Below, one piece after another: positions 27,589-64,000 of a stretch of 64,000 bases of DNA. The notes under the pieces were generated by a model. The model ran no database searches. It saw only the letters and a list, made by a program, of their open reading frames with translations, and was not told the DNA's origin. The DNA comes from Octopus sinensis (lineage: Eukaryota), in NCBI RefSeq assembly GCF_006345805.1, contig NC_042999.1:144460001-144524000 (forward strand), in the 5' to 3' direction. Made by a program: the position numbers and the translations under genes. Position 1 is the stretch's first letter, and every line of letters starts with the position of its first letter.

Positions 27589-28710
27589 GTAGGAAATTTT
27601 GATTCTTGTAGTTTTATAGACACACACATTTTTTTTTTTTTCAGTTTGTACTTTAATTTTTGTTCCTTGTGAAGTGGCACGAATGACATTTTCAATCTAT
27701 AAATCTTGCAGTATTTAGTTTGATTCCTCTACATTTTCAGCTCAAATTCCACTAGAGTCATTTTACCTCCCATACTTCTAGGATCATGTACCAATGTGTC
27801 CTTCCTATTTTTGAGACAGTAGAGTATGATTTTAGGGAGATTTAACTGCTATTTCAAGTTGATTAAATAACCACAAAGTGGCTTCCACTCTCAACATAGT
27901 CTTGTTAAACTGTATTTAAGTTTTTTAACTCTTCTGAAATGTCGTACTGAGATTTGACACCCCAGCCTGTCTGTGTGTAATATCATCAACAGTAGCATCA
28001 TCGTTTTATGTCCACAATCCTTTCTGGTATAAGTTTGATAGTTTGACAGGATCCAGCAAGCTGAAGGAATATAACTTGCACCAACATCTTCAGTTTGGTA
28101 TACTTTCTACACCTTATTACCTCTCCAAACACCAACCACTTTACAAAATATACCAAGTGTATTTTTTATTGTGGTACCAGCACAATAGAGGTTGTCTCCC
28201 CCTCAGCAAAACAAAAGTGTTCTCTCAATCCTGCATTGTCTCAACAACCACTTACAGATTTGTATCGGCTACTTTTCTTGTAGCTCTAGTGCGGTATCTT
28301 TGTAACTAATAAGACTAAAGAGCCCCACAACTATAAGGGAGAATAAAAGAGAGAGTAATGACATTAGATGAGGTGTTGAGAGACAGTGAAAGATGATTGA
28401 AGAACAGATTTTTGTTGTGAGAGAGTGGTAATGAATAGCATGACAGAAGACAGTGTTGGGGGAATAATGAAAGGGACAGAGGAAAGGAGAAGGGAAATAT
28501 TAGTATTAGGGGTCAGTGAGAAAGAGATGAAGGCTGGTAAGGATGATGGGGTAGGTTAAGTTGGAGTGGATCAAATGCTACCCTGCATTACAAGCATGAA
28601 TAAGAGTGGGTGGAGGGGTGCATGAAAGAGAGATAGAAATGAGGATGACAAGAAACCAGAGAAGGTATGTGGAGAAGATAAATGAAAGAAATAAGAAGTT
28701 TTCTCAAGTA

Positions 28711-29585
28711 CTGCATGGCTGTGTAGTTAAGAAGTCCACTTCCCATCCACATGATTTTTGTGTCAGTTCTTTGTAGCCTCTTGGGTAAGTGTCTTCTACA
28801 ATAGCCCCAGACTGGCCAAAGCCTTTTAAGTGGGTTTGGTTGATGGAAACTGAAAGAAATCAGTTGTGTATATGTGTCTCCTTGTCTTGACATAGCATCA
28901 TCATCATCATCATCATCATTTAACGTCCGCTTTCCATGCTAGCATGGGTTGGACGGTTCAACTGGGGTCTGGGGAGCCCGAAGGCTGCACCAGGCCAGTC
29001 AGATCTGGTAGTGTTTCTACAGCTGGATGCCCTTCCTAACGCCAACCACTCCAAGAGTGTAGTGGGTGATTTTATGTGCCACCGACACAGGTGCCAGACG
29101 AGGCTGGCGAACGGCCACGCTCGGATGGTGTTTTTATGTGCCACCGACACAGGTGCCAGACGAGGCTGGCGAACGGCCATGCTCGGATGGTGTTTTTATG
29201 TGCCACCGACAGGTGCCAGACGAGGCTGACAAATGGCCACGCTCGGATGGTGTTTTTATGTGCCACCGACAGGTGCCAGACGAGGCTGACGAACGGCCAC
29301 GATCGGATGGTGTTTCTTACGTGCCCACAGTACGGAGGCCAGTCGATGCGGTACTGGCTACGGCCACAATTGTAAATGAGCATCACTGTCACACAAGTGG
29401 TATCCTCCATTTCCACTCTTCCATGGAAACATGTCCAGTCTTAGAGAAATATTACATCACTTGCAAATGGGTGAGAGTTGGGAGTTGGTAACAGGTAAGG
29501 CATCCAACCATTGAAAATCTGCCTCAGTGAACTGTTTCTAATTCAGTTAACCATAGAAAAGTAAACATTAAAATGATGATGATTA
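28711..29585 (+). mobile_element. Older SINE (head A + body E) split by a young antisense insertion
   Basis: Head A at 28711-28870. Body E resumes near 29370 and ends TTAAAATGATGATGAT. Same architecture at about 32545-32900. Confidence 0.65.
28906..29370 (-). mobile_element. Young RTE-type 3' UTR element with 62/60-bp tandem units
   Basis: CpG-rich. Two differences over ~180 nt from the reverse complement of 41461-41640. Two 62-bp and two 60-bp units. Confidence 0.9.
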
Positions 29586-29689
29586 TGCATATTGCCAGTC
29601 AATATGGTCTCTTTTCTGATGTTCAGCATCTTAACATGAATTGTCACCACTTCGTCATTTGTCTTTCAAGATTTTTGTCTTCTATAGGT

Positions 29690-29930
29690 ACAGTCTGCTT
29701 TGAGCACTCAGTACTTTTTCCTCTTATCATTTAGGTCATTCATACTATGTCATTCATGTACACTAACTTTATATGTCCAGTAAAGCAGGCTCATTTCATT
29801 CTAGTCCTCACACATCTTTTGCAATCAAGGCCCAAATCTTACTATGATGTAACATTGCACTCCGGACATAAACATCATATAATCTGCCCTTCACTCTGAG
29901 ACAGGTTCTTTGTTGCCAGGAGAATTGATA
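29690..29930 (-). mobile_element. RTE LINE C-terminal fragment
   Basis: Disrupted reading LLATKNL...GRLYDVYVRSAMLHHSKIWAL, like RTE GRLYDACVRTAMLHGSETW. Boundaries approximate. Confidence 0.6.
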
Positions 29931-30249
29931 ACTCTGAGCTTTTCCCAAGTCTAAAAACTATGCTTTCAGAGCAACCACTCCTACAGCTAATTAGGTAGGT
30001 CATTTAGGTAACAGAAACTATTGACTACACCTAGGGAGCACTCTGAGCAGTTGAGTGAATCTGTTTCCCAAGTGTTTTTCAGGTTTAATGCCCCTATGTT
30101 CCTGCCACATATGAAGGCTACCATTGCTGATCATACTGTACCTGTTGTGCAGTCATCATATTCATAAGACATGTATAAAGTTTCTACTTATTCCTTTACT
30201 GTATACCAAGCATAGTTATTTCCCTTTCTCAACTACTCTCTTCCTCCTC

Positions 30250-30337
<88 letters not shown>

Positions 30338-31336
30338 AGCTGTATATCTCTACTGCTTCAGTTTTCATTAGCCTTCATCCCTTTATAGTTTGAAAATTAC
30401 AGCTGATAGAAAATCCATACTAGGAATTTAACAGTTTTTTTTTTCTTCTCTTTCTACCTCTTTCCATTCTTAGAAATTTTAAGTATTCATAACTTACAGA
30501 TGATAATCTATAACTACAAACAACTTCTAGAAATTCACAATTTATATGTATATGATAACCTATAAGTTATAAATAACTTGTTGAATTTTATACTTTATAG
30601 GATGGTTTTGCTAGGAATTCAAAACTCCACCCTAATTTCATTTTTCTGTTTTTAAGCTGTATATTTAACAACTGATACCCTGGTTTTGTATTCATTTGAG
30701 AATATTGTAAAATTGAAACATACTGCAGTTTGTAATGAAGCATGTATGTATATGTTTGTGTGTTCACACACATGTATATATGTCAGAATACCTTGTATGA
30801 GCAAGCCCCATCTCTTTTGTCTCCTCTTCTCCCACCCTAACACTGTTCCTTCCATTATTCTTTCCATTACCATCTTCTCTCAATAAACCTCTTCTTTTCC
30901 ATCATGGGATGCTCTCTTTTGCTTTGCAAGTTGCCTCAAAAAGTACCCAATACACTCCAATTGATAACTGATTCAAACTGTTGCAATGCAGGGTTTGAGA
31001 GAATTCTTTAGTCATGGCAAAGCAGTCAGTATAGTTCTGGTGCACTATACACCTAGTACACACGGTGACGTAGTTGTTAGTAGGAAAGACATCCAGTCTA
31101 GAAGCCAAAAATGAGACATTGGAGGAAGACTGACCCATGGAATCCCTTGACACATTGAATTCTATCAAACCATTCTACCCATGCCAGCATGGAATATGGA
31201 CATCAAATGATGATAGAATGGATTCCGCAAGCTGCATCCCAAACTTCCAAACAAGAAAAGCAATAATTCTAAATAAGAACTGATGCAGCATAAAGAGGAT
31301 TCGTTAGTCTTTCTCTCTCTACTTTCTTTCTTTCTC

Positions 31337-31367
<31 letters not shown>

Positions 31368-32035
31368 TGCTACAACATGATAAAATATACCTAAAAAGTT
31401 AGTCTTCCCTTTTAAGGTACCAATTTTTGTATAATTCTCTTGATCCACTCCCACTCATTATGAAGAAATGAAATTCAAAGCTGACCTTTACAAACAGGAA
31501 TTGAACTTGGATTTAGCGGAGTACAGTAGAATGAAAGTAAATAGTATAAGATGATAATTACTCTGATGTGCTACTGTTTTTGACAACTCACCAGCCTGCA
31601 AATCAGGAAGTATGATTTGCTGTGACTGAAAATCTAACCCAGAATTTTATTTCAAGACAAAATATAAAATAAATAACACGAAAAATAATCAAAAAATTAA
31701 AAGAAAACAAGACTAACAAAATAAAGTTACATAACTGTATGTGTTAGCTTATATATAAATATATATATATATGTGTGTGTGTGTATATATATATATATAT
31801 CAAATATATAATATGTGTGCACATATAGATATATACATATTATTTATTAATTTATTATTTAACAGTTTTTTGGTTTTTTTTACATAAAACACTTTAATCA
31901 TTGTTCTGATATACTTTTAACAAATTCAAAAACAATATACTCTGTGGAATTGAAAAGAAAGCAGGCATGTGATGTGAAAGTTTACAGATTAAAAAAATAT
32001 TTTGAATAATCACAGCTTCAGATAATTTATAGCTG

Positions 32036-32075
<40 letters not shown>

Positions 32076-35000
32076 GGTATTTTGATGGGTACAAATCAGT
32101 TTCAAGTGTAAGAAAATGTACAGCACAAAGTAGATGTCTGCCCTTTATGATGATAGCTATTAACAGCCTGTTTTCTAGTTATTATATCACTTTTTCTTTG
32201 AAATGTCATTGGAAAATTTTTTTCTTTTTGTTGCTGTTGATTTGCTTCTTACTCTTGTGTCTGAGAGAGTTAAATCATTACAGTGAAAATGAGTAATTTT
32301 TTCTCGTATGAGAGTGTGTGTGTTTTAGGAACTGTCTACTTGTAGAGCTACTGTGTGTTGTTATTGTTTAGCTCTGATCAAAGACACTACTACTGTGACC
32401 TCTTTCTTTTTTACATTCAGAATTACATTTTTCCATGTATCCTTATTTTAGGACAGGAGAGAATGATTTGAGAAAATATGGCTATTTCTAAAAAGTTCAG
32501 TTACCATTTAGAGTCTACTTCATTGGCTCGTGTGTGTGTGTGTAGGTGTGGCTGTGAAGTTAAGAAGTTCACTTGCTAACCACAGGTTTCAAGTTCAACC
32601 TCACTATGCGACATCTTGGGCAAGTGTCTTCTTTTACAGTGTGAGAGGATTTTGGTGTGTGCAAACTGAGAGAAGCCTATCAAGTGTGTGTTTGTGACTC
32701 TTTGTGCTGACATTGCATAATAATAATAAACAACTATCCCCATCATCAAATGGTGTCTCTCATTTCCAATTTTCTATGAAAACATACCATTGGGAAATAT
32801 TATCTTGCTTAAAAATGTTGGAAACAAGAAGGACATCTGGATAGAAAATCTGCCTCACTCAATTCTGTCAGACACATGTTAGCATAGTAAACTGGCCAAA
32901 GTAATAACTATAGATATATATATACATTCCCAATATAGACCCCCATATGATGCTTTTGTTGAATACTTAAAGTGACAAGTGGTAGTTGGATAGAATTTCT
33001 GTGCAGTAATGATTACAGAGTGGGAAGTCAGTATCTGGAAACGTTATATAGAATAGCGTGAGTGTATGTGTGTTTTTATTTGAAGAACAATTAACTGTAT
33101 TTCATTTGGGATATCAGTTTTCAATGTTTCTTTCATTTTTATGTCTACTTTTCTTTGTTTGCCTTAGACAGAATTCATTGAGATAGATTTTCATAACTAC
33201 ATGCCATTCCCATCATCAACCCACACTTGCTTCCTTCCATGGTAATACTTCCCTATGCCCAGACAATATTTCCACAAAGATTGGAAATGAAGGACACTGC
33301 TTGCATGATGGTAACAACTATTGTGCAATATCAAAACAAGGAGACACACACAAACACACAGGTCTTCTTTCAGTTTTCGCCAGCCTGTTGAAGACACGTT
33401 TCCAGGATACCATGCTGTGAAACTAAACCTGAACTCATGCTATTAATGTTTAGCACTAACTGAATAGACAGCATAAATTTAGAACAAAACTGTACATTTC
33501 TTAACTAATTAACTCTTGTGAAGATATACCAAGCATTATATTAGCATGTTTTAATAACTACCCAAACACACAGACATGTGTATGTGACTGACAGGGAGTG
33601 AACATACATGTAGATATATACATGCAAGCATATATCATGCATACAAATGAGATACAGGCATGACTACATAGTTACAAAGTTTGCTTTGCAACCATATCAT
33701 TTCAAGTTCAATCCTGCTGCATGGCACCTTGTGCTGCCAACCAATGTCTTTTGAGCAAATTGGTAGACAAAGCTGTATAAAACATGTTATTGTATATATA
33801 TGTGTGTGTATATGTCTTGTCTTGAAATTTCAGCACTAATTGTGAATGAAATCACCATTCATACCAACAGGGTCATTTGCAGTCTTCCATGAAAATATGC
33901 CTGGCCTTTGATCTTTTCATTGTTTAAGGAACTAGGGGAAGTATTACTTTGATTGGAAATTAGTGAGGGTTGGTCACATAAATAGTGGATATTAAAATGA
34001 TAATGATGGTGTGTTTGTGTGTGTGTGTGTGTGTGTAAGAAAGGAAATTTCTGCAATGAAACTAAGAATGTTAAGCTTTACAAAAGATTTCATGATTTAC
34101 AGTAGTAGTGGTAGTAATAACGGTGGTGGTAATTGTAATATTTGTAACGTTACAGTAGTGATGTGATACTGGTTCAGGAAAGAAGTGGTTACGGGTGTGT
34201 TGGTAGCAGGAATGGTTTGGTGATGGTTGTTGCTATTGTAACTTGGTGGTGGCTTAGAAATTTGTCGTCTCCCACACAATTGAACTTGATTCAACCTCAC
34301 TTGGATAATATCAAAAAGAGAGGGAGTTTATGGAAGGAAGAGAAAAAGTCAAAAAGAACAACTTACTGATGAAACTTAGCATTTAATTGTAAAGATGCTC
34401 AAAAGCTTTCAATTTTTGCTTTTGAGCAAGGCACTTGTCTGGCTGAATTTATCTGTAGCTGAGATAGCGACTTTTAGTTGCAATTCATGTAGAAACACTA
34501 TCACAGATTCCTTTGGCCAAATAACATTCATCTACTTAATCATGTTTACGAACACACATGCCCTTCCCTTCTTAGACCCTCCAATTATCAAATTTAAAAT
34601 GTATAAAATTTTACTGCTCTGTAGCATAACTTATTGGTTGACTAGCTCAAACCAAAGCATAAGCATCATAGTTATCCATGTTTATTACCTTTAAAATTCC
34701 AAGCTCATTCGTAAGATAATTTATTTCTTTTGTCTACACTCATGGCCAACTTTTGCTAGGAATGCAGCATAGCTGATTAAATAGATTCACATTGTATTAC
34801 TGGTACTTACTTTACTGCCTTGACCATCCCCATAATAAACAAGTAACAATTATCTGATGAAATATGAAGCTAAGCTGTAGTCCAATGAGCTGTTTCTATC
34901 ATTACTACTACTACAATGGCTGTAGGGCAAAAACGAAATTATAGAATACTGAAGTAAATGCCTAGTAAGTATATAAGTGTTGTACCTGTCAAAAACTACT

Positions 35001-35952: not shown

Positions 35953-35956
<4 letters not shown>

Positions 35957-36044
<88 letters not shown>

Positions 36045-36083: not shown

Positions 36084-36260
36084 TCAAAGCTTGGTTTGCA
36101 TGCTTTCTTCCTCTTCTGCCTCTTCCTCCTCTACCTCTTCTTCTGCCGATGCCTCCTGTGCCGCTGCTTCTTCTTCCATCACGTTACCCTCCTCTTCTGT
36201 TTCTGTGATTGTGGGTTTAGCTTCCATTAACATATCACTTTTTTCTTCCATAATCTCCAC
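36084..36260 (-). CDS. Uncharacterised acidic protein, terminal coding exon
   Basis: ttacttttgtag|GTG to CTT TGA, 58 aa plus stop. VEIMEEKSDM...EEEAAAQEASAEEEVEEEEAEEEESMQTKL*; 24 of 58 residues are E/D. Not in the ORF track. Confidence 0.82.
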   Translation of the reverse strand: MEIMEEKSDMLMEAKPTITETEEEGNVMEEEAAAQEASAEEEVEEEEAEEEESMQTKL

Positions 36261-36488: not shown

Positions 36489-36909
36489 AAATATCAAATA
36501 TTGCTATCAATGGAAATTGTAGCTGTGATACCAGTGCCGGTGGCACGTAAGAGAACCATCCGAACGTGGCCATTGCCAGCGCCGCCCCAACTGGCCTCCG
36601 TGCCAGTGGCACATAAAAAGCACCATCCGATTGTGGCCGTTGCCAGCCTCGTCTGGCCCCCGTGACGGTGGCACGTAAAAAGCACCATCCGATCATGGCC
36701 GTTTGCCAGCCTCATCTGGCACCTGTGCAGGTGGCACATAAAAAGCACCCACTACACTCATGGAGTGGTTGGCATTAGGAAGGGCATCTAGCTGTAGAAA
36801 CACTGCCAGATCAGACTGGGCCTGGCGCAGCCTTCCGGCTTCCCGGACCCCAATTGAACCGTCCAACCCATGCTAGCATGGAAAAAGGACGTTAAATGAT
36901 GATGATGAT
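36489..36909 (+). mobile_element. RTE-type 3' UTR element with ~4 stem-loop units, in last intron of the minus gene
   Basis: Begins ATCAAAT...ATCAATGGAAATTG like the 40905 copy, ends GACGTTAAATGATGATGATG. Confidence 0.85.
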
Positions 36910-38995: not shown

Positions 38996-39045
38996 TGCTG
39001 TTTCTTTGATAATCTTCTCACTTTCAGTTTTTAGTTCTTCTGATG
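38996..39045 (-). CDS. Uncharacterised acidic protein, exon g
   Basis: ttttttttcag|CA TCA to GCA|gtaagc, 50 nt, phase 1 to 0. (A)SEELKTESEKIIKETA. Confidence 0.8.
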
Positions 39046-39823: not shown

Positions 39824-39858
39824 CTGTTATATCCACTTCTGCTTTTACCTCTTCTTGC
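39824..39858 (-). CDS. Uncharacterised acidic protein, exon f
   Basis: ttttctaacaatag|G CAA to ACA G|gtaagt, 35 nt, phase 2 to 1. QEEVKAEVDIT. Confidence 0.7.
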
Positions 39859-40860: not shown

Positions 40861-40904
<44 letters not shown>

Positions 40905-40906: not shown

Positions 40907-41660
40907 CAAATCAAATCAAAAATCAAACAAAATCAAATAGATGAACATCAATGGAATTTGTGGTACCAGTGCCGGTGGCACACAAGAAAATCATCCGAAC
41001 GTGGCCGTAGCCAGTACCGCACCGACTGGCCTCCATGCTGTGGGCACGTAACAATCACCATCCAATCGTGGCCGATCGCCAGCCTAATCTGGCTCCTGTG
41101 TCGGTGGCACATAAAAACACCATCCGAGCGTGGCCGTTCGCCAGCCTCGTCTGGCACCTGTGTCGGTGGCACATAAAAACACCATCCGAGCATGGCCGTT
41201 CGCCAGCCTCGTCTGGCACCTGTGTCGGTGGCACATAAAAACACCATCCGAGCGTGGTCGTCTGCTAGCCTTGTCTGGCACCTGTGTCGGTGGCACATAA
41301 AAACACCATCCGAGCGTGGCCGTTCGCCAGCTTCGTCTGGCACCTGTGTCGGTGGCACATAAAAACACCATCCGAGCGTGGCCGTTCGCCAGCTTCGTCT
41401 GGCACCTGTGTCGGTGGCACATAAAAACACCATCCGAGCGTGGCCGTTCGCCAGCCTCGTCTGGCACCTGTGTCGGTGGCACATAAAATCACCCACTACA
41501 CTCTCGGAGTGGTTGGCGTTAGGAAGGGCATCCAGCTGTAGAAACACTGCCAGATCTGACTGGCCTGGTGCAGCCTTCGGGCTCCCCAGACCCCAGTTGA
41601 ACCGTCCAACCCATGCTAGCATGGAAAGCGGACGTTAAATGATGATGATGATGATGATGA
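40905..41660 (+). mobile_element. Young RTE-type 3' UTR element with expanded VNTR
   Basis: (ATCAA)n-like start, two divergent units, six full 62-bp units, conserved 3' end and (ATG)n tail. Source of the spurious ORFs at 40766-41749. Confidence 0.9.
41089..41488 (+). repeat. 62-bp tandem repeat, 6 full copies plus a partial
   Basis: Units start at 41089, 41151, 41213, 41275, 41337, 41399 and 41461. Unit: CTGGCACCTGTGTCGGTGGCACATAAAAACACCATCCGAGCGTGGCCGTTCGCCAGCCTCGT. Confidence 0.97.
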
Positions 41661-43762: not shown

Positions 43763-43802
43763 TTGTTCTCTGCTTCATTTTCACTTTCTGTTGTTGATGA
43801 TT
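43763..43802 (-). CDS. Uncharacterised acidic protein, exon e
   Basis: Strong donor AAC AA|gtaagt. Acceptor ttatctttgtcaaag gives 40 nt, phase 1 to 2, (K)SSTTESENEAEN. A competing acceptor ttatcttctag would start the exon at 43840 (78 nt, different frame). Confidence 0.55.
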
Positions 43803-43967
43803 CTTTGACAAAGATAATTTTTCACTTTGTTCATCTGTATCTAGAAGATAATTTTCATAGTTTAGCATTCCACATTAAATATGTATTGATTTCTTTTGGA
43901 TTAGGGAGAGACAAGTAAGTTGATATGAAGCTCATACTTTTCCAAAATTATTTACTGCATAATTTAA

Positions 43968-44563
43968 TTGATAGAAGTGATGACAAGTGACCAAGACCTT
44001 TGGAGATATACTGTACTTGAGAAGACCCAGCAAGCCAAATGAGACCATAACCATGGCCTATGCCAGTGCAGCATAACCAGCTCATTTAAGAGCACTCTTA
44101 TATTGTTGGGCAATAAACTGTGATTGTGAAGACCTGTGAAGTCATTGTCGTGGCCGATAAAGGTACTGCCTGATTGGCACCCATACCGGTGGCACATAAA
44201 AAGCACCATTTGAGTGTGATCGTTGCCAGTACCACCTGACTGGCTCCTGTGCTGGTGGCACATAAAAAGCACCATTCAAGCATAGTTGATGCCAGTACCA
44301 GTTGACTGGTTCCATGCCGGCGGCATGTAAAAAGCACCATTCAAGCATGGTCAATGCCAGTACCGCCTGACTGGCCCTCATGCCAGTGGCATGTAAAAAG
44401 CACCCACTACACTCAGAGTGGGTGGCATTAGGAAGGGCATCCAGCTGTAGAAACTTTGCAAGATCAGATTGGAACCTGGCGCAGCCTTCTGGCTTGCTAG
44501 CCCTCAGTCAAACCATCCAATCCATGCCAGTATGGAAAACAGATGTTAAACAACGATGATGAT
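43968..44563 (+). mobile_element. 5'-truncated RTE LINE (ORF end + 3' UTR with 4 units)
   Basis: IEVMTSDQDLWRYTVLEKTQQAK* (RTE DRxxWR-type end) runs directly into the stem-loop units and (ATG)n tail, showing the units belong to the LINE 3' UTR. Confidence 0.85.
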
Positions 44564-45664
44564 GGTGGCGGCAGCAGCAATGATGACTGAATGAATGAAT
44601 GAATGAAATAAGGTTTCAACTACAATTCGAAACCTGATTACAGACTTGGTTTGATTGCAATTTTATTTTCAGTAGCAAACTAATAAATACATATATGACA
44701 ATGAGCTCTCCCATCGAAAACTATATATGAAAACTCAGTAGCAGTCACTTGTATGCAAAGCTTTGATTTGCTTGTTCCACTAACCTTCATCACTACAGGA
44801 TTTTAAGAACAGCATTGAAAGTGTTGATACTGACAACCTGCTCCAATAATGTATTTTAAATGGAGTAAATTTGTACAGAGTCTGCTCCTAATTGTTGAAA
44901 ACTCTCCTCCTAACTAACGTAAACTGAACTGCTGCACAATGTGCCATGTACCACACAAAAAGATGCATGTTAGGAAAAGGTAGGAATACTAATCAAAGTA
45001 GACTGATGTTGATCTTCTTCACCATTCACAGTCTACATCATATATGAAGTTCCCCCTTGCCTAAGTTTATCTAGTAATGCTAAACATACACCAAAGCAGA
45101 TTGCAAATGTAAACCAGAATACACAGAATAGCATACATAACTGCAATGTAATACATCAAAATTCATTGGTTAAGATTTTTGCACAGGTTTGCTAGCATAG
45201 AACATAATTGCAACTTTGAGATACTCTTCTGGAAAATTTCCAAAGTAATGCTCACCTTGCTAGTTGGCTGTTGATCCTATGCAAGGTCCATCTGTTCTTT
45301 AGACAGGACTTGTTTCTGTCCTGTTGGACTTCTGGTAACCCTTTTCACTAAGATCAGTTAGTTTTTGATGACCCAACCAAGTGACTGGTTGCATTAGATT
45401 ACATATTACTGATAGCACACTCACAAGCAAACTGACATTACACACCCACAACCCACACCACATATACCATATGTTTAATAAAGGTATACTTAATCTTGCA
45501 GCTTGGACTGAAGATTAAACTGACTAAATTTGTCCATTATTAAATACTAATCAAAGATCAGTTACCACTGCCTTTCAAACTGTCAAAGTTAAGAATCATA
45601 TAGCCACTTATAGATACTTGAACAAAATCATGACATGCATAAAAATGGGGTTTTGCCAACTTAC

Positions 45665-46214
45665 TGTGTGACATTCTTTTAGAATTGTATTCTTCCATTA
45701 TTTCTGAGACTAAACTGCTGGTATTTTTGTCCACTTCTAGTTCAATCAGATCTTCTGCATTGTCTTCTATGCTCACCTCCTCCTCACTTTTCTCTTCTTT
45801 CTTTTCTTCATTGTCATCATCGCTTTTATTGTCTTTGTCACTTTGGTGATCAACGTTATCTTCAACGGAGCTGGAGGTCTGATTGATATCTTCAGTTTGA
45901 TCATTGTGAGAACATGGGCCTTGTTTGAGGGATAAATCCTCACCAACATCCTCTGTCAACAAACTAACTACTTCATTACCAGTATCTACTCCTCCACTTT
46001 GCTCTTTATCATTTGCATCTTCAATACTGCTCTTGCTACTGTCGCTGCTACTACTGCTGCTTCTACTACATTTCTTGTTGTTCTTGTTTTTGACTTTATC
46101 TGTCAGAACAATTGGCACCAAATTGGTCTGTTGCTTCTTTTTGACTTCCTTGCTCTCTGTACTTTGTTCTGTGAAGTGAACAGTGTCTTTGCCTTCATGG
46201 GAAATGAACTCTAA
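45665..46214 (-). CDS. Uncharacterised acidic protein, exon d (large D/E/S/K-rich exon)
   Basis: Inside track ORF 45558-46316. Acceptor attttgcag|TTA GAG, donor CAC A|gtaagt, 550 nt, phase 0 to 1. Contains SSSSSSDSSKSS and DDDNEEKKEEKSEEE stretches. Confidence 0.85.
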
Positions 46215-48998
46215 CTGCAAAATAGAATTGAGAGGGAATTTGAAGATCTTAGCTGTCATAATGGTTATGGTGATGGTAGTGGAACATTGAGGAAGAAAAT
46301 GAATGGGGACAACCATTATAGAAATAGCATGTAGTCAAAGAGGTAGTGTTACCAACAATGATTGATGTTGTGTGGACAAAGTGTGACTTTAACAATGAAC
46401 TCTACTAAGAGACTGACAAAAGATTGAATGTTAGACAAACTTATACCCTTAATAAATTTGGATGAGTTCTTACATTTATATGACACCAGATCAATTCTGT
46501 AATCAAACATTTTTCTTTTTTACTTCTATGGGAATACAGAGTTCAGGCAATGTATGTTGGACTATATTTTCTTTATGGCCTGTGTAAAATTTGGCTATTA
46601 TTTCTAGCATGTCAAGCAATTACAGGACATTTTTGGTATTTATCTTAATGAATGAATCCAGTTTGAATGTTGAAGTCAACACCACTGGATTTGAAATTAA
46701 AATATAGTGGAGCATAATTAAATACCTTGCAGTATTTTGTTTGGCTGTCCTAAATATTTGCCAGTCTACCAGCTTAATGATAATAATAACAACAACAATA
46801 ATGGTTTCAAATTTTGGTACAGGCCAGCAGATTTTAGAGAAGATTATATCAACCCCAGTACTCAACTGGTACTTATTTTATCAATCCTGAAATGATGAAA
46901 GACAAAGTCAGCCTCAGCAGAATTGGAACTCAGAACATAAAACTTGAAACAATTATAATAATAATAATGGTTTCAAATTTTGGCAAAAGGCCAGAAATTT
47001 CATGAGAAGGGGCTGAGTCAATTATATCGACCCTAGTGATAAACTGAGGAACATAACTCCACTCAACAATGCTTCATCTTCAAAGATCTTACCCCACCCT
47101 GTTCAACACCACTACATTGGTCCTTGAGTGTCTTTAGCAGGATTCTTCCTGTTGTAAGCCTTCAAACCAGACCAATTTGTTCTCTCCCCACTCAAATTTT
47201 TCCTGCAGATATATAGCCCAGCCAAAGATCAGGCAATGCATCAATCTCACCAGTCTATGAAGACTTGCAATGGTTATGGACACTGTCCCTACCTACACTG
47301 ACTACCTTATATAAAAAAGTAAAAAGCCTATACAGTATTATAACATTTGAAATAACTGTAAGCACTTACATCATTGCTCTCTATTGTTGGAAGAACCTTT
47401 CTGGATATACGACTGGATTTTGCCCTGTTTCGAGGTGCTGGTGGTCTCCGGAACTGAAAAGAAAAAAATTTCAATTCACATGTTTTCTGATCTTCAAAAT
47501 CTCAATAGGAAATAACTCCCTGTAACAGGAGGTGTTGTTTTCTATCTCACTCAGGTTAAAAAAAGTGATTTTCTTTGTGTGTATGTGTGTGTGTGCACAT
47601 GTATGCATATGATCGTGTTTGAAATTTTTGGTACATTCTCTAAAATATGTGTGCGTGTGTGTGCATATGTTCATATAAGTGGCTCTTGAAGCAATCCTAT
47701 GTAGTGTTTCTGCATGTATATGCTTGCCTCACATATTTAAGTGTGCATGTATGTATATGTTTGCATATATGTGAGCATGCATGTCTTTATCAGTAGTAAA
47801 TAAATTGCCACACCTCCCTTATCAGACCAGTTATAGTGAATCAATATATAGAACATTGTTTCAGATCCAGTCAATAACTTGTGAAAAATGTATCAGTGAA
47901 CATGATGAAAAAAAATCATTCTAATATTATCATCATCACATGAGATGGGTCTTTTGCTGACGTGGACTGTACAATACAACATCTCTCCATACTGAACCAG
48001 CTTGTTTGAGGTTGATTATTTTCATGTTTGATCTAATTAAATATTTTTGATACTTCTTTATCTACCTCTAATATAGATGCCTTATATTAGATGTCTGCAT
48101 TAACCTAGCATATATTGCCCAAAAATAGATGATGCTCTGTCCTGGTTGTTTTCTCAATTCACTTATGCTTGTTTAAGTTAGCATTTCATATTCAGTGATC
48201 TTTTATTTAACTTTTTCATTACTGATACCTACAAATTTTCTGCATTCACTGATTATGCTTTGATTGCTATAGAAAATGTCATATTTTTTAGACATCGTGT
48301 AATTTCTTCCTTCTTTTTATGCAGCAAAAAACTCATCATGGCCAACACAAGAAGTAGATTTAAAATCTTTTCCAACCAATTTCATGCACTATGATGTTAC
48401 TCACTACAGTGTATGCTGCATCACTAGGATAGTTAGATTTATCTGCCACTTTCTTCAAGCCATATGAGCAGTCTGAAATCTACGAGTTTATGATTACTAA
48501 AGGTTAATATTTACTTAAATACACTAGATGACCCCAGATTTCTGGTATTTTAGCTTAATATTGATTTCTATTGCATACTGAAAGAAATCTCTCTGTTAAC
48601 AAGTACTGTAGTCTGAGTTACATATTTTCTTTTAACTCATTTGGCACTAACCCTCTGAGACTACCTCTTGTAATATGATATAAAGCCTTCTGCTTTAAAG
48701 CATTCACTTTTAAATTAAAACCTTCCAATATAATTTTTATGAAAGAACATAAGCTTATACCAATAAATGAAAATGCTAATAATGTTACTAAATCTCTCCA
48801 AAGTTTTGATGTATTTCATTAGCAGTATGTTTACAACTTTGTGATTCACGCTTTTAAGATTTAAGCAGTTACAGTTCTCAGTGGATTCTGCAATAAGAAT
48901 CACATCCTTGTGATAAGAATTTTCAAGATCTTGGAGCCTATGAGCAGAACAAAGCAAAGCACAAAACTGCTAATTTTAAGTGAAAAAGAAAGAATTAC

Positions 48999-49068
48999 CG
49001 ATTTTAAAATTTCTGATTCCCTCTGTATTAATCCAAAGTCATCTTCAATATTCTCATTTTTATTTTTG
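48999..49068 (-). CDS. Uncharacterised acidic protein, exon c
   Basis: ttgcatttcag|C AAA to TCG|gtaatt, 70 nt, phase 2 to 0. KNKNENIEDDFGLIQRESEILKS. Bridges the phases of exons b and d exactly. Confidence 0.75.
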
Positions 49069-49885: not shown

Positions 49886-49971
49886 TCTACAGAATGTTTT
49901 ATAGAACCTTTCCCTCCTTTTTGCTTCTGATCCTTGTCTGAAGCATCGCCATGTTTTCGTAAAACTTGACC
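49886..49971 (-). CDS. Uncharacterised acidic protein, exon b
   Basis: tttgtttcag|GGT to GTA GA|gtaagt, 86 nt, phase 0 to 2. GQVLRKHGDASDKDQKQKGGKGSIKHSV. Confidence 0.78.
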
Positions 49972-56355: not shown

Positions 56356-56533
56356 CATTATGAGTATATCACTAGGGAGTTCTTCTTCGTAAGTTTCAGA
56401 ATACCTGAAGCATGGTTTCTTCACCGCAACTTCTACAGTGTTGTTAACAATTAGTTTTGGTGGTTGGCTCTCAAACGCTCTGATTTTATCCTTTATTGAA
56501 AGAAGTTCTTCTTGCTCAGGTTCCTGAAGTTTT
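56356..56533 (-). CDS. Uncharacterised acidic protein, exon a (most 5' found)
   Basis: Minus strand: tttttgatag|A AAA CTT to ATA ATG|gtaagc, 178 nt, phase 2 to 0, open. KLQEPEQEELLSIKDKIRAFESQPPKLIVNNTVEVAVKKPCFRYSETYEEELPSDILIM. Confidence 0.8.
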
Positions 56534-56775
56534 CTATCAAAAAGAAGTTAAATGAACAAATAACTAAGATAAAATAAACAAAATGTTGAAAAGGGAAAAA
56601 ATTATTATTAGGTGTGTGTGTGTGTGCATATATACATGCATACATACAGATTGTCTATACAATTGAAAATATCAAACTTGGAAATATGGCTCAAGCAGCT
56701 TCAGTTTTTAATAAACTAGAGGGAGTAGGATCAAACTTAGGTTAGATAGATAGATATAAATGTACATATAATATA

Positions 56776-56940
56776 TTTATTTACTACCCACAAGGGGCTA
56801 AACACAGAGGGGACAAACAAAGACAGACGAACGGATTAAGTCGATTACATCGACCCCAGTGCGTAACTGGTACTTAATTTATCGACCCCGAAAGGATGAA
56901 AGGCAAAGTCAACCTCGGCGGAATTTGAACCCAGAACATA
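56776..56940 (-). mobile_element. tRNA-derived SINE family D, CpG-rich copy
   Basis: GGTTCAAATTCCGCCGAGGTTGACTTTGCCTTTCATCCTTTCGGGGTCGATAAATTAAGTACCAG. Abuts a head-A fragment on the + strand (about 56943-57020). Confidence 0.85.
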
Positions 56941-57991
56941 ATGGCACAAGCATGGCTGTATGGTTAAAAAGTTAACTTTACAACCACATATATGGTCTGG
57001 GGATTCAATTCCACTGCGTTTGTCATGAATGTTTATATTCCACACTTAACCTGTTTGAGCAAAGCACCATTAATGTGAACATCCTTTATTGACTAGTTGC
57101 TCAGCACTTTTGAAAAACCTTTGGAATAAGGCAACAGGAAGAGCATCCTGACCCAAATAATTCTCCATCCAAATCTATGCTAGCATGGAAAAAGAATCAT
57201 TAAACAAATGAATGAATATATAAATGTGTGTGTGTGTGTGTGATGTTCTATCCAAATCACAATTGTATTCTAGTTTTATTATCAAGTTTTGTTTTGTTTT
57301 TTTCATATATTCATGAGTTCATTACTGTTTGCTTGAAAAAGTAAAGTTCCTCAATCTAACATCAATGTTTCTGGGTTATCATACCCTCATAGTCAGTGGA
57401 GTATGATTTGCCCACTTGTTGCTGCCTGTTTTTACTGGGCTGAACCACTATGATTGGTGTATAGATGTAACTGGTGAAATTTGAATCTTGACTTTAAGAT
57501 TTATACATCATCTGTCAAATTTGTATTATATATTATATACACACACACACTCACACACACATGCATTCACATATAAATTCCATAGTTGTCATTTGTTACG
57601 GTTAGTTAGGCATTGGTAAAATCTAAGTTGCTAAGTAAACTTGATATAGGCAGTATCAGCTGACAGAAAACATCTCTCTTTCTCTCTCACTCTCAGTCTC
57701 TCTCTCTCTCTCTCTCTCACTCACACACACATTTCCTATTTCATTCTTTCATCTTCTTAGTCTCTGTACTTTTCTGTCTCACATACTTTCTCTCACTGTT
57801 GTACTTCTTTTCTCTTTCTCTCTCTTCTGCTTTCTCTGTTTCTCCCCATCAGGCATGAGTATATTAATTCAGAGTTTGTTCCATAACTATGTGGTTTCAA
57901 GTTCTGTCTAACCACTAGGCATCTTGGGCAAGTGTCACAGGTCAGTCAATGCCTTTTGAGTGGAATTGATAGACAGAAACTGTATGGAAAT

Positions 57992-58042
<51 letters not shown>

Positions 58043-58049
58043 TTAGCAT

Positions 58050-58440
58050 GTTATGGACTAGTCTTTCTAAAACCTGCTATTAAGGTTATCAAGTATCTTT
58101 TCTCTCTGGCTTTTTCCTTTCAGTTTCCTGGTTGTCACCAAGTGTTCAAAGTTTTTTCTTTACGTATGGTGTCCAGTGAACTGAGCCTGTCTCTTTATGT
58201 TGTTGAGAAACTTTCCAGTAGGTTTTACTTGCCTAAAAACCTCAATGTTTGTCACTCTACCTGCATAGGGCAACTCCAGTATTCTTCTAAGGAACCTCTT
58301 CTCTACAGTATTTATAAAGTAGAGAGTGTTGATCATGAAATGCTTTATCTGTCCTTTCAGTTCTGTTAATACTATTCATAATGATAATTCCAAATACATC
58401 GATCACCTCATGAGTGGACTAGATCTTCCATTTCTTGTTA
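58050..58440 (-). mobile_element. RTE LINE C-terminal fragment
   Basis: FLRRILELPYAGRVTNIEVF...RQAQFTGH...EHLVTTRKLKGKSQREKILDNL, like BovB/RTE C-termini. Confidence 0.75.
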
Positions 58441-60871
58441 GGCAAAAGAATCAGACGTAAACATATATCTGTTTTGTAAATTGAAAATTATGCTATGTTG
58501 TTTAAGTATCAGTTATGGCTATGATCACATTGTTAGCAGCACAGTGGTTGTGCAAAAAAAATTTGGTATGAGTATAGAAATACTACTTAATGAAACATCA
58601 TTATTATGCACCTGGTTATAAAGTTACAATTGTAATAGTAAGTAAATTGATGAAATCAAAATATGATACTGTTACTATTTGTCACATATTTATTTCCTTT
58701 ACTCTTCTTTTTATTTATCATGCTTCATTAAGTTCTGTCAACTCCTTTTTTCCTTCTTCCACATTAGATGTCACCATACTGCGGATTCAGACCTTGTATG
58801 TATATATAATAGACCTCTCTTAATCCCAGACTCTCACCAGTTCATTTACTTCATAATATATCAAACTCCAATTACGTTGCATTGAGTGTTGCGAGGGAGT
58901 ACACATTCCCTATATTAAAACAGTACCAGTACCTCCACACTTCTGTATACTTCTCTTGCCAGAGCAGTATTATTCTTGCTGCAATATTTTTCTAAAGATT
59001 ATTTTATTGACCAGACAAAAACAGGTTGAGACTAAAATGCTGCTATAATTAGCCCTCATCGTACACAAAATTTATCTACTTGACAATATCTTTATCAACA
59101 GTTTACTTGAAATGAGAAATATAGTTCCAAAAGGACTGCTTTTAGGAACAAAAACTAGAACCACTTCTCAACAATGGCACCTTTAACTGCTTTCTGAGAT
59201 ATAAACATTCCTAAAACAAATGAAGGAAAGAGAGCTGGGAAAGTCGGGGAAAGCAAAAATATTATTGAAACACTCCTTTGCTTTCTTCCTAAACTCCTGA
59301 TATATGTGATCATCTAAATTTTATCTCTGCATGAACACTTTGTCCTAATCTAAATCCTACACTCTACATTGATATCATCATCATCACCATTATCACACCT
59401 ACAGTTAACCATATTGTTTGAATATTGAAATGGTTATTCAAGCTTATTACTGACAGTATTTTGTTAACTTGTAGTTCTGAGGCATTATATCATTAATAAG
59501 CACAACAGATTTGGTATCCTAAAATCACCTTGGTAAATGCTTGAACATGTTAAGCTCTGTCCCACCATCATTTTCACTGCTCCCTGTCAAGCTTCCTCCA
59601 AATCTCATTCCCTACACACATCATCTCTTTATCTCTGATATTATTCAGCCACCATAATCACCTGAGAGCAGAATTGGCACATTCTATGCAATCTCACCCC
59701 TTCCTTGTTACATTCTTTTTCCTCCACTCTCTCCAGAACCACTTCTATTCCCCATTATCTTCCTCCACTCATGCTCTCTTCTCTCAACTATATTCCATCC
59801 ATCCTTACACCTCTTTCATCCCCTATCACTCTCAATGCCTTTACATATTTAACATAACTCCATACCCACTGAACCACTCCCATACAACTCACCTTCAATT
59901 ACTACAGCCACCTCGATCCCATCTAATCATTTCCCCTCACATTCTGATGAAATTTTCACCTTTATCCCTCTTGCATCTCTTCTACAACAAGATATCTATT
60001 TCTATCCCTCTATTATTCTTTTAACTTCTCATCTACTGGCACAAAGCCACCTCCCTTAGTACTACTACCTCCAGTTGAGAGGACTTTATCCTGTCTTGCA
60101 AGGTATTTGGTAACCCCACCAGTGCTGGTGCCACAAAAAAAAAAAGCACCTAGTATGCTCTGTAAAGTGGTTGGCATTAGGAAGGGTATCCAGCCATAGA
60201 AACCATGCCAAAATAGACATAGCCTTCCAGCTTGCTAGCACTTGTCAAACCATCCAACTCATGCCAGCATGGAAAGAGAACATTAAATAATGATGATGAC
60301 GACGACAACAATGATGAAGCAGTTCTTTAATTTAAACTTTCCCACAAACAAATCCTAAATACACTTGAGCATACCTAACCAGAAAAGATGTCATTCAACC
60401 ACATAATGCAATGAAAGCTGAGATAACTTTCAATACATCATATTAGAACACACAGTTGGGAAGTGCAAAAATTTCTCCATCCAATACTGTCACCAGTTCA
60501 AGCATTGATCCTTGGATCTCAGTCACTGCAAACCCAAGCTAAATCAAATGCTTGACTCATTTCCTCTCTGCAGAAAAATGCCAATCTTTGGAACACAATG
60601 TGTTCTAGCCCCAAAAGGATATTCTTTTTCACTATGACTGCTACAAACTGTTGCCATTGTACAAGATAACAGAAAGTCATAATCAGCCACTTTCTTTATC
60701 ATTTTATGTCTCATTTCTTTCTTAGTTGGGCCTACCATCTCTCTGTTCTCTACATCAGGCATTATTGCTATACTGCTTCTGGGAATTTTATTCAAAGTAG
60801 TGTTGTAGCATTTGACTGACTGACATAAAAATGTACTATATAACTTCCATCGATGAGCTCCTTCTGTGTGC

Positions 60872-61280
60872 TACTCTTACTCTCTTTTACTTGTTTCAGT
60901 CATTTGACTGTGGCCATGCTGGAGCACCACCTTTAGTCGAGCAAATTGACCCCAGGACTTATTCTTTGTAAGCCTAGTACTTATTCTATCGGTCTGTTTT
61001 GTCGAACCGCTAAGTTACAGGGACGTAAACACACCAGCATCAGTTGTCAAGCGATGTTGTGGGGACAAACACAGACACAAAAACACACACATATATATAT
61101 ATGTACATATACATATATACGACAGACTTCTTTCAGTTTCCATCTACCAAATCCACTCACAAGGCTTTGGTCGGCCCGAGGCTATAGTAGAAGACACTTG
61201 CCCAAGGTGCCACACAGTGGGACTGAACCAGGAACCATGTGGTTGGTAAGCAAGCTACTTACCACACAGCCACTCCTGTG
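60872..61280 (-). mobile_element. Full-length tRNA-derived SINE (head A + body C)
   Basis: Collinear with 41711-42103. Confidence 0.9.
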
Positions 61281-63018
61281 TTGTCAACTAAATTGCAAGT
61301 TTCCAGTCAGACTACTCCACTATAAGAGATATTGAAGAAGATTCAATTACATATCTCCCACACTCTTCCTCTTTGTTAATTCCAACAGAACATATACACT
61401 TCATTCCTCTATCTTTCTACATACAACTGAGCCATCTCACATTAGTTTTTCACTGTTTCTATGAAAATCCATTGCACATATTTTCCAGTAGGTTCAACCA
61501 AAGAAACAGTCTTCCAACACCACATCCTTGCTATTTATGAGTAATGTTCAAACTCACTACTAATGATCTCATGACACTGACACATTTATTAACATTGTTA
61601 AAACATATTTCATCCTGATTCATTTCCTGACCTTCTACAAAGCACAAGTGTAACACATTAAGAGTATTGTTCACATTTTTGGCAGTGTTGATGCTACATG
61701 TGTAGCAATCCTAGGTTACATCCATATAAGTCCATCAGATTAACAAAGATTTTCATCACCCTACAAAAATTAACCACAAATATCCTGTGTCTTTGTTTTC
61801 TACTGCTGCTCCTCTGAAGTGGCAAGCCATGCACTATCTCCACACAAACCAATTTGATGACCCATCTGTCTTCTATTCATCAGCTTTACTTTGTTTTACA
61901 CACCAAATATTTTATCTACTTGATCCTACTTAGAAGTATTGCTTTCTAGCATGCTTACGCTCTTCACATTTTCCTCTATAGTAATCAACCTATTGGAGTT
62001 CAAGATAAACATAAACCACATTTGCCTCACCTGTCTAGGAGAGCCCACAATGGTTATAACCAACACTCTTCTTTCTTCAGTTATATAATTAAACCAGTTA
62101 TCTAATGAAGCATTCAATCATTAAGCAGGTTTATATGGTCTTAATTGAAATTACCCTTTTCAGTATGTGTGTGTGTGTATGTAGTGCAAAGGTTACAAAA
62201 TATACAACAAAGAAGTAAACACTAAAAACAGGATTGGAAATGGGGTGTGGGGAAGAAGGAAATGTCTTTAATGTTTTGAGTATTCACTCTTATTTCCAAA
62301 AGATAGAATAGACATAGAGAGGATAGAATGGAGAAATTGAAATGCACATGTAGCCAACTATCACAGCTTTGTGAATGACCAGCAATAGTTGGGAGGTCAC
62401 TTTAGGTGTTAATAGCAAGGGGAATGATTTTGGGCTCAATGTGTGTGTGTGTGTGTAAGGAATTACCAGCAAAGCAGAAACTGGGGTGTCATTTTTGAGT
62501 CTTATGTCCTATAAGGCTCAGCAAAACAGTCAACAAAGCATCATCCAGTTTGTCCTATGTAAGAAGAGATGTAAAACGAACAGAGAATGCAGTAAATGAA
62601 ATTGCTGGAGATACATGTGAAGGAGTGAATCATGAATTTTTGAAAATATATATTCATATATGTTTGCAAAAGATCCACTCTCTTTTCTCACAAACTCAAA
62701 TTTTCCACTATTTGTGTTCAAGTAACAGTAAGATTTGTAGTAACAGCAAATCATCACTTCAAATGAATAAATTCTACTATATATATTAAGTACACTTTCT
62801 ATGGTTTAACATCCAAACATATATATATAAACAATTTAACATTGAAGGATTACTCAGTACTATTTCATAGAGTACATATTTACTAACTTTTACAAGGAAA
62901 AGTTGGCAGTGATTTCAAAGTTTTTGGTTTGCTTATTATATTCTAATTCTGTTAGTAAATTAGCACATGTGATGCACTCTGTTGGGCAGTTATCACTAAA
63001 AATTGGTATCATTATTAA

Positions 63019-63230
63019 GATAGTAAGCTAGCAGAATCATTAGCATGCTGGACCAAATGCTTTGTAGCATTTCTTCCAGTTTTACAGTCTGAGTTCAAAT
63101 TCTACCAAGGTTGATTTTGTTTTTCATCTTTCCAGGGGTCAATAAAATACCAGTTGAGCACTGAGGTTGATGTAATCAACTGGCCATTTCCCTACTAAAT
63201 TTCAGGCCTTGCCCCTCTAATAGAAAGGAT
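63019..63230 (+). mobile_element. tRNA-derived SINE family D
   Basis: AGCTAGCAGAATCATTAGC...GAGTTCAAATTC...CAGTTGAGCACTGAGG...AAATTTCAGGCCTTG, then (ATT)n. Confidence 0.75.
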
Positions 63231-64000
63231 TATTATTATTGTTATTATCATTACTACTTGAAGAAATATTGCCCTCTGGGTGGTTTTCTGTTACTATATA
63301 TAATCGTGACTTCATTCTGCAGTCATAGTTAGAAAGAGCATTCAATGAGTACATGGTTTGTAGAGCAATTAATTTGAGTTGGATTATGGTGAGAGAGAGA
63401 GAATAATGCGGAGCTAACAAAATGTTGTGCTTTAGTTGCCTTTATAGCTGTTCTCTCATCTGTCCTCTGTGTGTATGTGAACAATAAGGCTTCGTACACT
63501 GGGATAGGCTAGTTCCTTGTCCACTGAATTTTGGAGACACATCAGCTTTCTTTGTCTGGTTTTGCTTGCCAGTTAAAACCATTTATCAGATTGTGGTGGC
63601 TGCTGCATCTGTTTTTTTACAGATTAATGCTTAGTTGCATCACAAATATTATTTTCTAATTAATTATGGGAGAGGAGTACTGTGAAAATATTGCATATAT
63701 GTTGGTCAAGTCAGTTCCTGAGCAACTAGTCCATAATCATATTTCGGATGATGGTTTATAGTTTTGCAAAATATAAGTTACTTATTCAATCTTAAACATT
63801 TTTGTTTTGCTTTTGTGTTGCTCTCTTCAATTTTAAATATATATTTATGTAAAAACTAAGAAAGTTTATGACCCAGTTTCAATTTCCCAGCTGGGCAATT
63901 ACTCTATTTTAACAAGTAGCCATTCCCTAAGAAGGCTATGAACATCACAATTTGCCATTACTCGTCTATGTTTTAGGATTTATGAATTTATAGTAAAGAA

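What the first reader, a model, noticed from the sequence alone, without database searches (positions are those of the whole stretch)
27589..64000. ASH2L 3' exons are missing for 36 kb while an antisense multi-exon gene occupies the space: probable nested gene
Seen: ASH2L stops at a phase-0 donor after YKDK. Established: orthologues continue with xLxKFKSxLYFEEKD, IFYKNG, FPAISLY, NFGP and the DPY30-binding tail. I found none of these on the + strand, yet an eight-exon minus gene runs 56533 to 36084 and probably beyond the window. Inference: ASH2L has an intron over 36 kb hosting an antiparallel gene, or the locus is truncated or misassembled. A manual scan can miss short exons.
Basis: partly seen in the sequence, partly recalled or inferred. 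Interest (0 to 1): 0.7.

Follow-up and report, generated by a model that had tools for sequence, protein, structure and literature searches.

The report
Ordinary nested gene inside ASH2L intron
In this octopus chromosome piece the chromatin gene ASH2L is interrupted by a giant intron (over 81 kb) that holds a second, octopus-specific gene on the opposite strand; this is a common arrangement in animals, and NCBI's annotation of the genome already draws the two genes this way.

Summary
The window is Octopus sinensis chromosome CM016861.1, about 144,460,001-144,524,000. ASH2L (+ strand) ends in the window at exon 27395-27588 (…YKDK|GTAGGA, phase 0). The 119-residue C-terminus is not found anywhere in the window on either strand, by tblastn with human and mollusc tails or by a 27-sequence profile.

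The minus-strand gene is real. Exon 56533-56356 matches XP_036357347.1 (600 aa) at 100%. Nine of its exons lie in the window, from 56533 to 36084. Its first exon (signal peptide and transmembrane helix) lies about 35 kb beyond the window.

In the NCBI gene table for the 79-kb locus, a 763-aa gene with ASH2L domains (PHD, WH, SPRY) on the opposite strand spans the whole locus and runs past both ends. So the 600-aa gene is nested, and the ASH2L intron exceeds 81 kb.

An independent O. vulgaris assembly is collinear over all 79 kb, which argues against a misjoin.

The RefSeq name "DNA ligase 1" is spurious: the protein has no Pfam domain. The exon searched found no homologue outside Octopus.

Nested genes in long introns are common, so interest is low.

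Caveat: I did not see the ASH2L tail exons themselves.

The parts
3230..3318 (+). ASH2L exon (about human residues 165-192)
   Evidence: tblastn with human ASH2L. The cag|...|gtaatt boundaries were located by script.
5040..5135 (+). ASH2L exon (about human residues 195-227, DIIPYIDKNWE...)
20999..21216 (+). ASH2L exon (about human residues 317-389, start of the SPRY region)
   Evidence: 67% identity to human
21759..21836 (+). ASH2L exon (APQLKISDD...ATHG)
24575..24664 (+). ASH2L exon ([16 protein letters not shown]...)
27395..27588 (+). Last ASH2L exon in the window; ends YKDK at a phase-0 GT donor
27589..64000 (+). First 36.4 kb of the giant ASH2L intron. The intron continues at least to window-equivalent position 108,984, so it is longer than 81 kb.
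   Evidence: No ASH2L tail in the window or in the 79-kb locus L003. The ASH2L gene range overruns L003.
56356..56533 (-). Nested gene, exon 2 (residues 231-289 of XP_036357347.1)
   Evidence: 100% match to P0281; gatag|...ATG|gtaagc
49886..49971 (-). Nested gene, exon 3
48999..49068 (-). Nested gene, exon 4
47370..47453 (-). Nested gene, exon 5
45665..46214 (-). Nested gene, exon 6 (550 nt; acidic, Ser-rich). It lies in the longest open frame of the window.
   Evidence: The open frame is 258 codons, against a maximum of 185 in 100 Markov simulations.
43763..43840 (-). Nested gene, exon 7: 78 nt here and 79 nt in O. vulgaris (one G missing here)
39824..39858 (-). Nested gene, exon 8 (long isoform)
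38996..39045 (-). Nested gene, exon 9 (long isoform). The O. vulgaris model uses a GC donor 3 nt earlier, at 38999.
36084..36260 (-). Nested gene, last coding exon of the long isoform; includes the stop codon at 36084-36086
   Evidence: (100% to residues 607-664 of O. vulgaris CAI9720258.1)

Best explanation
The window is part of Octopus sinensis chromosome CM016861.1. ASH2L is the SPRY-domain core subunit of the SET1/MLL (COMPASS) histone H3K4 methyltransferase complexes. It is transcribed left to right. After the exon that ends YKDK it has an intron of more than 81 kb, which splits the SPRY domain.

A second protein-coding gene lies entirely inside that intron, on the opposite strand. It has ten exons spanning about 59-63 kb. 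It encodes a 600-664-aa protein with an N-terminal signal peptide, one transmembrane helix and a long acidic, serine-rich, probably disordered cytoplasmic tail. It has no recognised domain, and its RefSeq name 'DNA ligase 1' comes from low-complexity similarity.

The two genes share no exon sequence. ASH2L pre-mRNA has to be transcribed through the whole nested gene and spliced across it to reach the last roughly 120 codons (the end of SPRY and the DPY30-binding motif).

Shown directly: the ASH2L exons and donor; the absence of the tail in the window and in the 79-kb locus; the nested gene's exons; the overlapping gene ranges in the public annotation; and collinearity between two assemblies. 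Inferred: that the 763-aa ASH2L product contains the tail exons, and that the nested gene is expressed.
For: Source of the window: positions 29845-64000 are 100% identical to L003 = CM016861.1:144489845-144568984.

Gene table of L003: the 600-aa gene is at 10001-69140 (+). A 763-aa gene with PF21257 PHD_ash2p_like, PF21198 ASH2L-like_WH and PF00622 SPRY is at 1-79140 (-) and 'runs over the end of the locus'.

The O. vulgaris ASH2L model stops about 3 kb after the YKDK exon. It has 641 aa and no SPRY hit. The 122-aa difference from 763 aa matches the 115-130-aa tails seen in other molluscs.

The tail is absent from the window, from L003 and from L004.

Nested gene: exon 2 hits P0281 at E = 3.8e-28 with 100% identity. 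P0281 residues 231-600 map to the window at 100%. O. vulgaris P0282 residues 231-664 are reproduced exactly by nine GT/GC-AG exons in L004, and those exons are 98.6-100% identical in the window. Hydropathy shows a transmembrane segment at residues 160-185.

The two assemblies are collinear over 79 kb.

A long intron at the same position in other species: no tail within 10 kb after the YKDK exon in three unnamed relatives (L001, L005, L006); no upstream ASH2L exon within 10.6-11.7 kb before the tail in Batillaria and Mactra.
Against: I never saw the ASH2L tail exons. They lie beyond every stretch I could fetch, so the statement that they sit past the nested gene's 5' end rests on the range and length of NCBI's predicted model, not on sequence I read.

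That model is a computational prediction, and I had no RNA data. The O. vulgaris annotators drew ASH2L as ending before the nested gene.

Substitution divergence between the two octopus species is lower in the nested gene's exons (0.31%) than in its introns (0.67%), but not significantly so (p = 0.15). Purifying selection on the nested gene is therefore not shown.
Confidence: 0.9

Rival explanations
1. Gene fission, or a truncated ASH2L. In octopus the ASH2L transcript ends shortly after the YKDK exon, as in the O. vulgaris 641-aa model. The tail is then either a separate transcription unit or lost, and the minus-strand gene is simply a convergent neighbour.
For: The O. vulgaris annotation ends ASH2L at about window position 30,559, 5.5 kb from the other gene's 3' end. 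Tail-only proteins of 115-140 aa are annotated in seven molluscs, two annelids and Saccoglossus, including a RefSeq 'isoform X2' in Biomphalaria.
Against: The O. sinensis RefSeq model joins both parts into 763 aa and spans the locus. The SPRY fold and the DPY30-binding motif need the tail (established knowledge of ASH2L structure). Tail-only models are what gene predictors produce when an intron is very long. The YKDK exon ends at a good GT donor in phase 0, not at a stop codon.
Confidence: 0.06
2. Assembly misjoin or local rearrangement: foreign sequence was placed after the YKDK exon.
For: Only that the tail is absent for more than 36 kb, while the other ASH2L introns in the window are 0.5-16 kb.
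Against: An independent O. vulgaris chromosome assembly has the same order and orientation from the YKDK exon through the whole nested gene and 10 kb beyond. Intervals of more than 10 kb at the same intron position occur in five other loci.
Confidence: 0.02
3. The minus-strand 'gene' is not a real gene but a chance or transposon-derived open frame that annotation pipelines strung together.
For: No Pfam domain. Exon 2 has no homologue outside the Octopus cluster among 1.84 billion representatives. The sequence is low-complexity. The RefSeq 3' end uses non-canonical junctions. Exon conservation is not significantly above that of introns.
Against: The 258-codon open frame exceeds all 100 simulations. 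Nine consecutive exons have canonical splice sites and a maintained frame in O. vulgaris. Exon 1 has a signal peptide and a transmembrane helix. Two independent annotations call the gene. It does not match the repeat families that fill the rest of the intron.
Confidence: 0.04

Closest known systems
Nested (intronic) protein-coding genes of metazoans, e.g. the roughly 10% of Drosophila melanogaster genes in nested structures (PMC3814207, PMC5174743), and 2mit in an intron of timeless2 on the opposite strand (PMC3786989)
   Same: A complete gene lies inside one long intron of a host gene, on the opposite strand, with no shared exons. As described for most nested genes, the inner gene looks young or lineage-restricted and the host gene is old and conserved.
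   Different: The inner gene here is itself large: about 60 kb, ten exons and a 41.7-kb first intron. It is not a short, recently inserted duplicate.
ASH2L / Ash2 (SET1/MLL COMPASS core subunit; PDB 6KIU, 6PWV, 3TOJ and others)
   Same: The window's exons are 56-74% identical to human ASH2L over residues 195-509, with lower identity for residues 165-200. The order is the same. The O. sinensis gene product carries the PHD_ash2p_like, ASH2L-like_WH and SPRY Pfam hits.
   Different: The product is 763 aa against 628 aa in human. The gene has a giant intron inside the SPRY domain. I did not compare this with the human intron lengths.
DNA ligase 1 (the RefSeq name of the nested gene)
   Same: Only a long acidic, lysine- and serine-rich low-complexity stretch.
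   Different: There is no ligase adenylation, DNA-binding or OB-fold domain. The protein has a signal peptide and a transmembrane helix instead.

Membership tests
Nested intronic gene pair | A host-gene exon lies upstream of the inner gene on the host strand | tested here: met
   ASH2L exon 27395-27588 lies 8.5 kb to the left of the inner gene's stop codon at 36084.
Nested intronic gene pair | Host-gene exons also lie beyond the other end of the inner gene (annotation level) | tested here: met
   The 763-aa ASH2L gene range covers L003 1-79140 and overruns it. The inner gene starts at 10001.
Nested intronic gene pair | Host-gene tail exons seen in sequence beyond the inner gene, and joined to the upstream exon in RNA | not testable with these tools
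   The tail is not in L003 or L004. No tool reaches further along the chromosome, and no RNA data were available.
Nested intronic gene pair | No host exon is interleaved with the inner gene's exons | tested here: met
   No ASH2L-like segment on either strand of window 27.6-64 kb or of L003.
ASH2L orthologue | PHD-like, winged-helix and SPRY domains with high identity to ASH2L | tested here: met
   PDB ASH2L E = 8e-29. Six exons are collinear with human ASH2L. Pfam families of the annotated product are listed.
ASH2L orthologue | C-terminal end of SPRY and the DPY30-binding motif | not testable with these tools
   These are outside the window and outside the fetched loci. They are inferred from the 763-aa versus 641-aa lengths and from the SPRY hit.
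ATP-dependent DNA ligase (the RefSeq name of the inner gene) | Ligase adenylation, DNA-binding and OB-fold domains | tested here: not met
   hmmscan of P0281 and P0282 against Pfam found 0 families at E <= 0.1.
Single-pass type I membrane protein | N-terminal signal peptide plus one hydrophobic helix | tested here: met
   N-terminus MEMLLVLSLTLLFNSVSIHC. Kyte-Doolittle maximum of 2.6 over residues 160-185. This is a simple hydropathy calculation; no dedicated predictor was run.

The most novel reading that the evidence does not exclude
The very long intron after the YKDK codon may be an old, conserved feature of lophotrochozoan (and perhaps hemichordate) ASH2L that holds an internal promoter. 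That promoter would produce tail-only proteins, such as the 134-aa Biomphalaria 'isoform X2'. Such proteins contain the DPY30-binding end but not the rest of ASH2L and could modulate COMPASS. In octopus, antisense transcription of the nested gene might additionally tune how much full-length versus truncated ASH2L is made.
Probability: 0.06. Interest if true: 0.4.

Novelty: already known. Interest (0 to 1): 0.12.

Why it matters
It matters little for biology. Nested genes in long introns are routine in animals, cephalopod introns are long, and NCBI's annotation of O. sinensis already shows this pair.

The practical value is for annotation quality:
- The O. vulgaris ASH2L model is truncated by about 120 residues.
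- Many mollusc and annelid genomes carry ASH2L split into two gene models at this same intron.
- The name 'DNA ligase 1' for the nested gene is wrong.
- The O. sinensis assembly has a one-base difference that breaks the long isoform of the nested gene.

Tried and rejected
- An exact look-up of the 252-aa open frame at 45558-46316 found no record.
- A look-up of the Nucella tail protein found no record.
- Pfam on single candidate exons gave nothing.
- My codon-usage and splice-site exon finders recovered only some of the exons. They also picked a weak GTTAAT donor for exon 7, which happens to restore the frame. Mapping the annotated proteins replaced these guesses.
- None of the 120 listed tail-like proteins looked cephalopod, so the octopus tail sequence could not be obtained.
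- A test for lower divergence in exons than in introns between the two octopus species was not significant.
- Rfam and tRNA scans of the window found nothing.
- The window's downstream region has no similarity to the region after the YKDK exon in relative L001, and the nested gene's exons have none in the Batillaria tail locus L002. The nested gene is therefore not detectably shared with them.
Full report
**Where the window comes from.** One exon of the minus-strand gene (window 56356-56532) was searched against 1.84 billion representative proteins. It found a single hit: P0281, 600 aa, 100% identical over residues 231-289, E = 3.8e-28. The cluster look-up names it XP_036357347.1, 'DNA ligase 1 isoform X1 [Octopus sinensis]'. 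The other cluster members are O. sinensis isoform X2 (582 aa) and two O. vulgaris proteins of 664 and 592 aa. Its gene lies on CM016861.1, and the locus fetched was L003 (144,489,845-144,568,984, reversed). Window 29845-64000 aligns to L003 79140-44985 at 100% identity. By arithmetic on those coordinates, the window is CM016861.1:144,460,001-144,524,000 on the forward strand.

**The ASH2L observation.** Its C-terminal 119 residues turned out identical to database protein P0069, and residues 445-509 agree with the PDB ASH2 chains. With this probe, tblastn finds six + strand exons. I placed their boundaries on AG/GT sites: 3230-3318, 5040-5135, 20999-21216, 21759-21836, 24575-24664 and 27395-27588.

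I then searched for human residues 510-628 in three ways:
- tblastn with the human tail at E <= 100 and word size 2;
- hmmsearch --max with a profile of 27 ASH2L tails against every six-frame fragment of 8 aa or more (best E = 3);
- tblastn with tails from seven molluscs, two annelids and Saccoglossus (best E = 0.14).

All hits are chance-level, on both strands. The same tblastn probe finds 78-90-nt upstream exons at E = 1e-9 to 1e-11. The absence is therefore real and not a sensitivity problem.

**The minus-strand gene.** Residues 231-600 of P0281 map to the window at 100%. The first five window exons chain exactly with GT-AG sites: 56533-56356, 49971-49886, 49068-48999, 47453-47370 and 46214-45665. 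The longer O. vulgaris isoform P0282 (664 aa) continues through 43840-43763, 39858-39824, 39045-38999 and 36260-36084. In the O. vulgaris locus L004, nine GT/GC-AG exons reproduce P0282 residues 231-664 exactly. All nine are 98.6-100% identical in the window.

The count is nine exons in the window, not eight. Exon 1 (residues 1-230) is at L003 10001-10690, about 35 kb past the window's right end. It is followed by a 41.7-kb intron.

The protein has these features:
- a hydrophobic N-terminus typical of a signal peptide;
- one strongly hydrophobic segment at residues 160-185;
- a cytoplasmic part of about 400 residues in the 600-aa form, longer in the 664-aa form, with 89 Asp+Glu and 52 Ser in P0281;
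- no Pfam domain, so the ligase name is a low-complexity artefact.

The big exon sits in a 258-codon open frame, longer than any seen in 100 dinucleotide-preserving simulations of the window (maximum 185). Exon 2 has no homologue outside this Octopus cluster.

**Is it nested?** The gene table returned with L003 lists two genes. The first is the 600-aa gene at 10001-69140 (+). The second is a 763-aa gene on the opposite strand, with Pfam PHD_ash2p_like, ASH2L-like_WH and SPRY, drawn from 1 to 79140 and flagged as running over the end of the locus. In the same tool's output for O. vulgaris, a gene that really ends inside the locus is shown with its true end coordinate (78327). The 1-79140 range therefore means that ASH2L overruns both ends of L003.

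L003 position 1 corresponds to window coordinate 108,984. The ASH2L intron that opens at 27589 is thus longer than 81 kb, and the 600-aa gene lies wholly inside it.

tblastn finds no tail in L003 or L004. The tail exons must therefore lie more than 10 kb beyond the nested gene's start.

The O. vulgaris annotators ended ASH2L about 3 kb after the YKDK exon: 641 aa with no SPRY hit. The 122-aa difference from 763 aa matches the 115-130-aa tails of other molluscs. I infer that the O. sinensis model contains the tail and that the O. vulgaris model is truncated.

**Misassembly.** O. vulgaris chromosome OX597816.1 is an independent assembly. It is collinear with the window from 25,843 to 64,000 and with all of L003, at 97.5-99.6% identity, with only small unaligned gaps (under about 1.2 kb) between blocks and no rearrangement. 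A misjoin in this stretch is therefore very unlikely.

**Comparative context.** Three long contigs from unnamed relatives carry the YKDK exon (67-70% identical to human in tblastn; the called ORF products were 74-79% identical to the window's exon):
- In L001 the other ASH2L introns are 0.4-3 kb, yet no tail exon occurs in the 10 kb after the YKDK exon.
- The same holds in L005 and L006.

Conversely, in Batillaria (L002) and Mactra (L007) the four tail exons sit within 2-6.3 kb of each other, with no upstream ASH2L exon in the preceding 10.6-11.7 kb.

Tail-only proteins of 115-140 aa are annotated in Magallana, Candidula, Biomphalaria, Nucella, Elysia, Batillaria, Mactra, Lamellibrachia, Paralvinella and Saccoglossus. 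The simplest reading is that a long intron at this position is widespread and often makes gene predictors split ASH2L. In Octopus the intron has grown further and acquired a gene. None of these loci shows similarity to the nested gene.

[quoted passage not shown] Opposite-strand examples such as 2mit in timeless2 are well described (PMC3786989). This locus fits that pattern. The public annotation already draws it this way. I therefore rate it as already known and of low interest.

**What remains unproven.** I did not see the tail exons or any RNA evidence. Divergence between the two octopus species is too low to show selection on the nested gene: 0.31% in exons against 0.67% in introns, p = 0.15.

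Noticed in passing
window 43763-43840 (- strand), around 43793: Relative to O. vulgaris, the O. sinensis sequence lacks one G (TTGTCA-AAGAATC versus TTGTCAGAAGAATC). Exon 7 of the nested gene is therefore 78 nt instead of 79 nt, and the frame into the last three exons is broken. This probably explains why the RefSeq isoforms X1 and X2 end early, X1 through junctions that are not GT-AG. The three downstream exons are still open and 98.6-100% identical to O. vulgaris. It could be an assembly error or a real variant.
   Followed up: partly
L004 (O. vulgaris OX597816.1) 78327-82771; roughly window 30,559 leftwards: The O. vulgaris ASH2L gene model (641 aa, no SPRY hit) ends about 3 kb after the YKDK exon. 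It apparently lacks the roughly 120-residue C-terminus that the 763-aa O. sinensis model has. This is probably a truncated annotation.
   Followed up: partly
L001, L005, L006 (unnamed ENA contigs); L002 (Batillaria); L007 (Mactra): The intron after the YKDK codon is longer than 10 kb in every relative I could examine, while neighbouring ASH2L introns are 0.3-7 kb. Tail-only 'ASH2' proteins are annotated in ten lophotrochozoan or hemichordate genomes, which suggests ASH2L is widely split by gene predictors at this intron.
   Followed up: partly
Nested gene product XP_036357347.1 / XP_029634042.1: The RefSeq name 'DNA ligase 1' is not supported: there is no ligase domain. The protein looks like a single-pass membrane protein with an acidic, disordered tail, and the one exon searched has no homologue outside Octopus.
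   Followed up: yes
window 29065-29325, 36534-36749, 41043-41493, 44169-44404; similar copies near 3.5-3.8, 17.4-17.9, 25.1-25.4 and 60.0-60.3 kb: A repeat family occurs in both orientations. It has a conserved head (translating as ...WVGRFNWGLGSPKAAPGQSDL..LQLDALPNANHS...) followed by arrays of 60-66-bp tandem units. It produces long spurious open frames (up to 228 aa) that could be mistaken for exons. More copies lie in L003 beyond the window.
   Followed up: no
window 18891-19109 (-) and 23526-23729 (-): There are weak, sub-threshold Pfam matches to a DDE_3 transposase (E = 5e-4) and to a reverse transcriptase, RVT_1 (E = 8e-3). These look like decayed transposon remnants inside earlier ASH2L introns.
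   Followed up: partly
window 5136-20998: This 15.9-kb gap between ASH2L exons should contain the poorly conserved linker exons (human residues 228-314 and the extra length of the 763-aa octopus protein). tblastn with the human protein did not detect them, and I did not resolve them.
   Followed up: no
L001 14819-17260 (-): In an unnamed relative, an 813-aa open frame with no Pfam hit sits in the long interval after the YKDK exon, on the opposite strand. It has no similarity to the octopus nested gene.
   Followed up: partly
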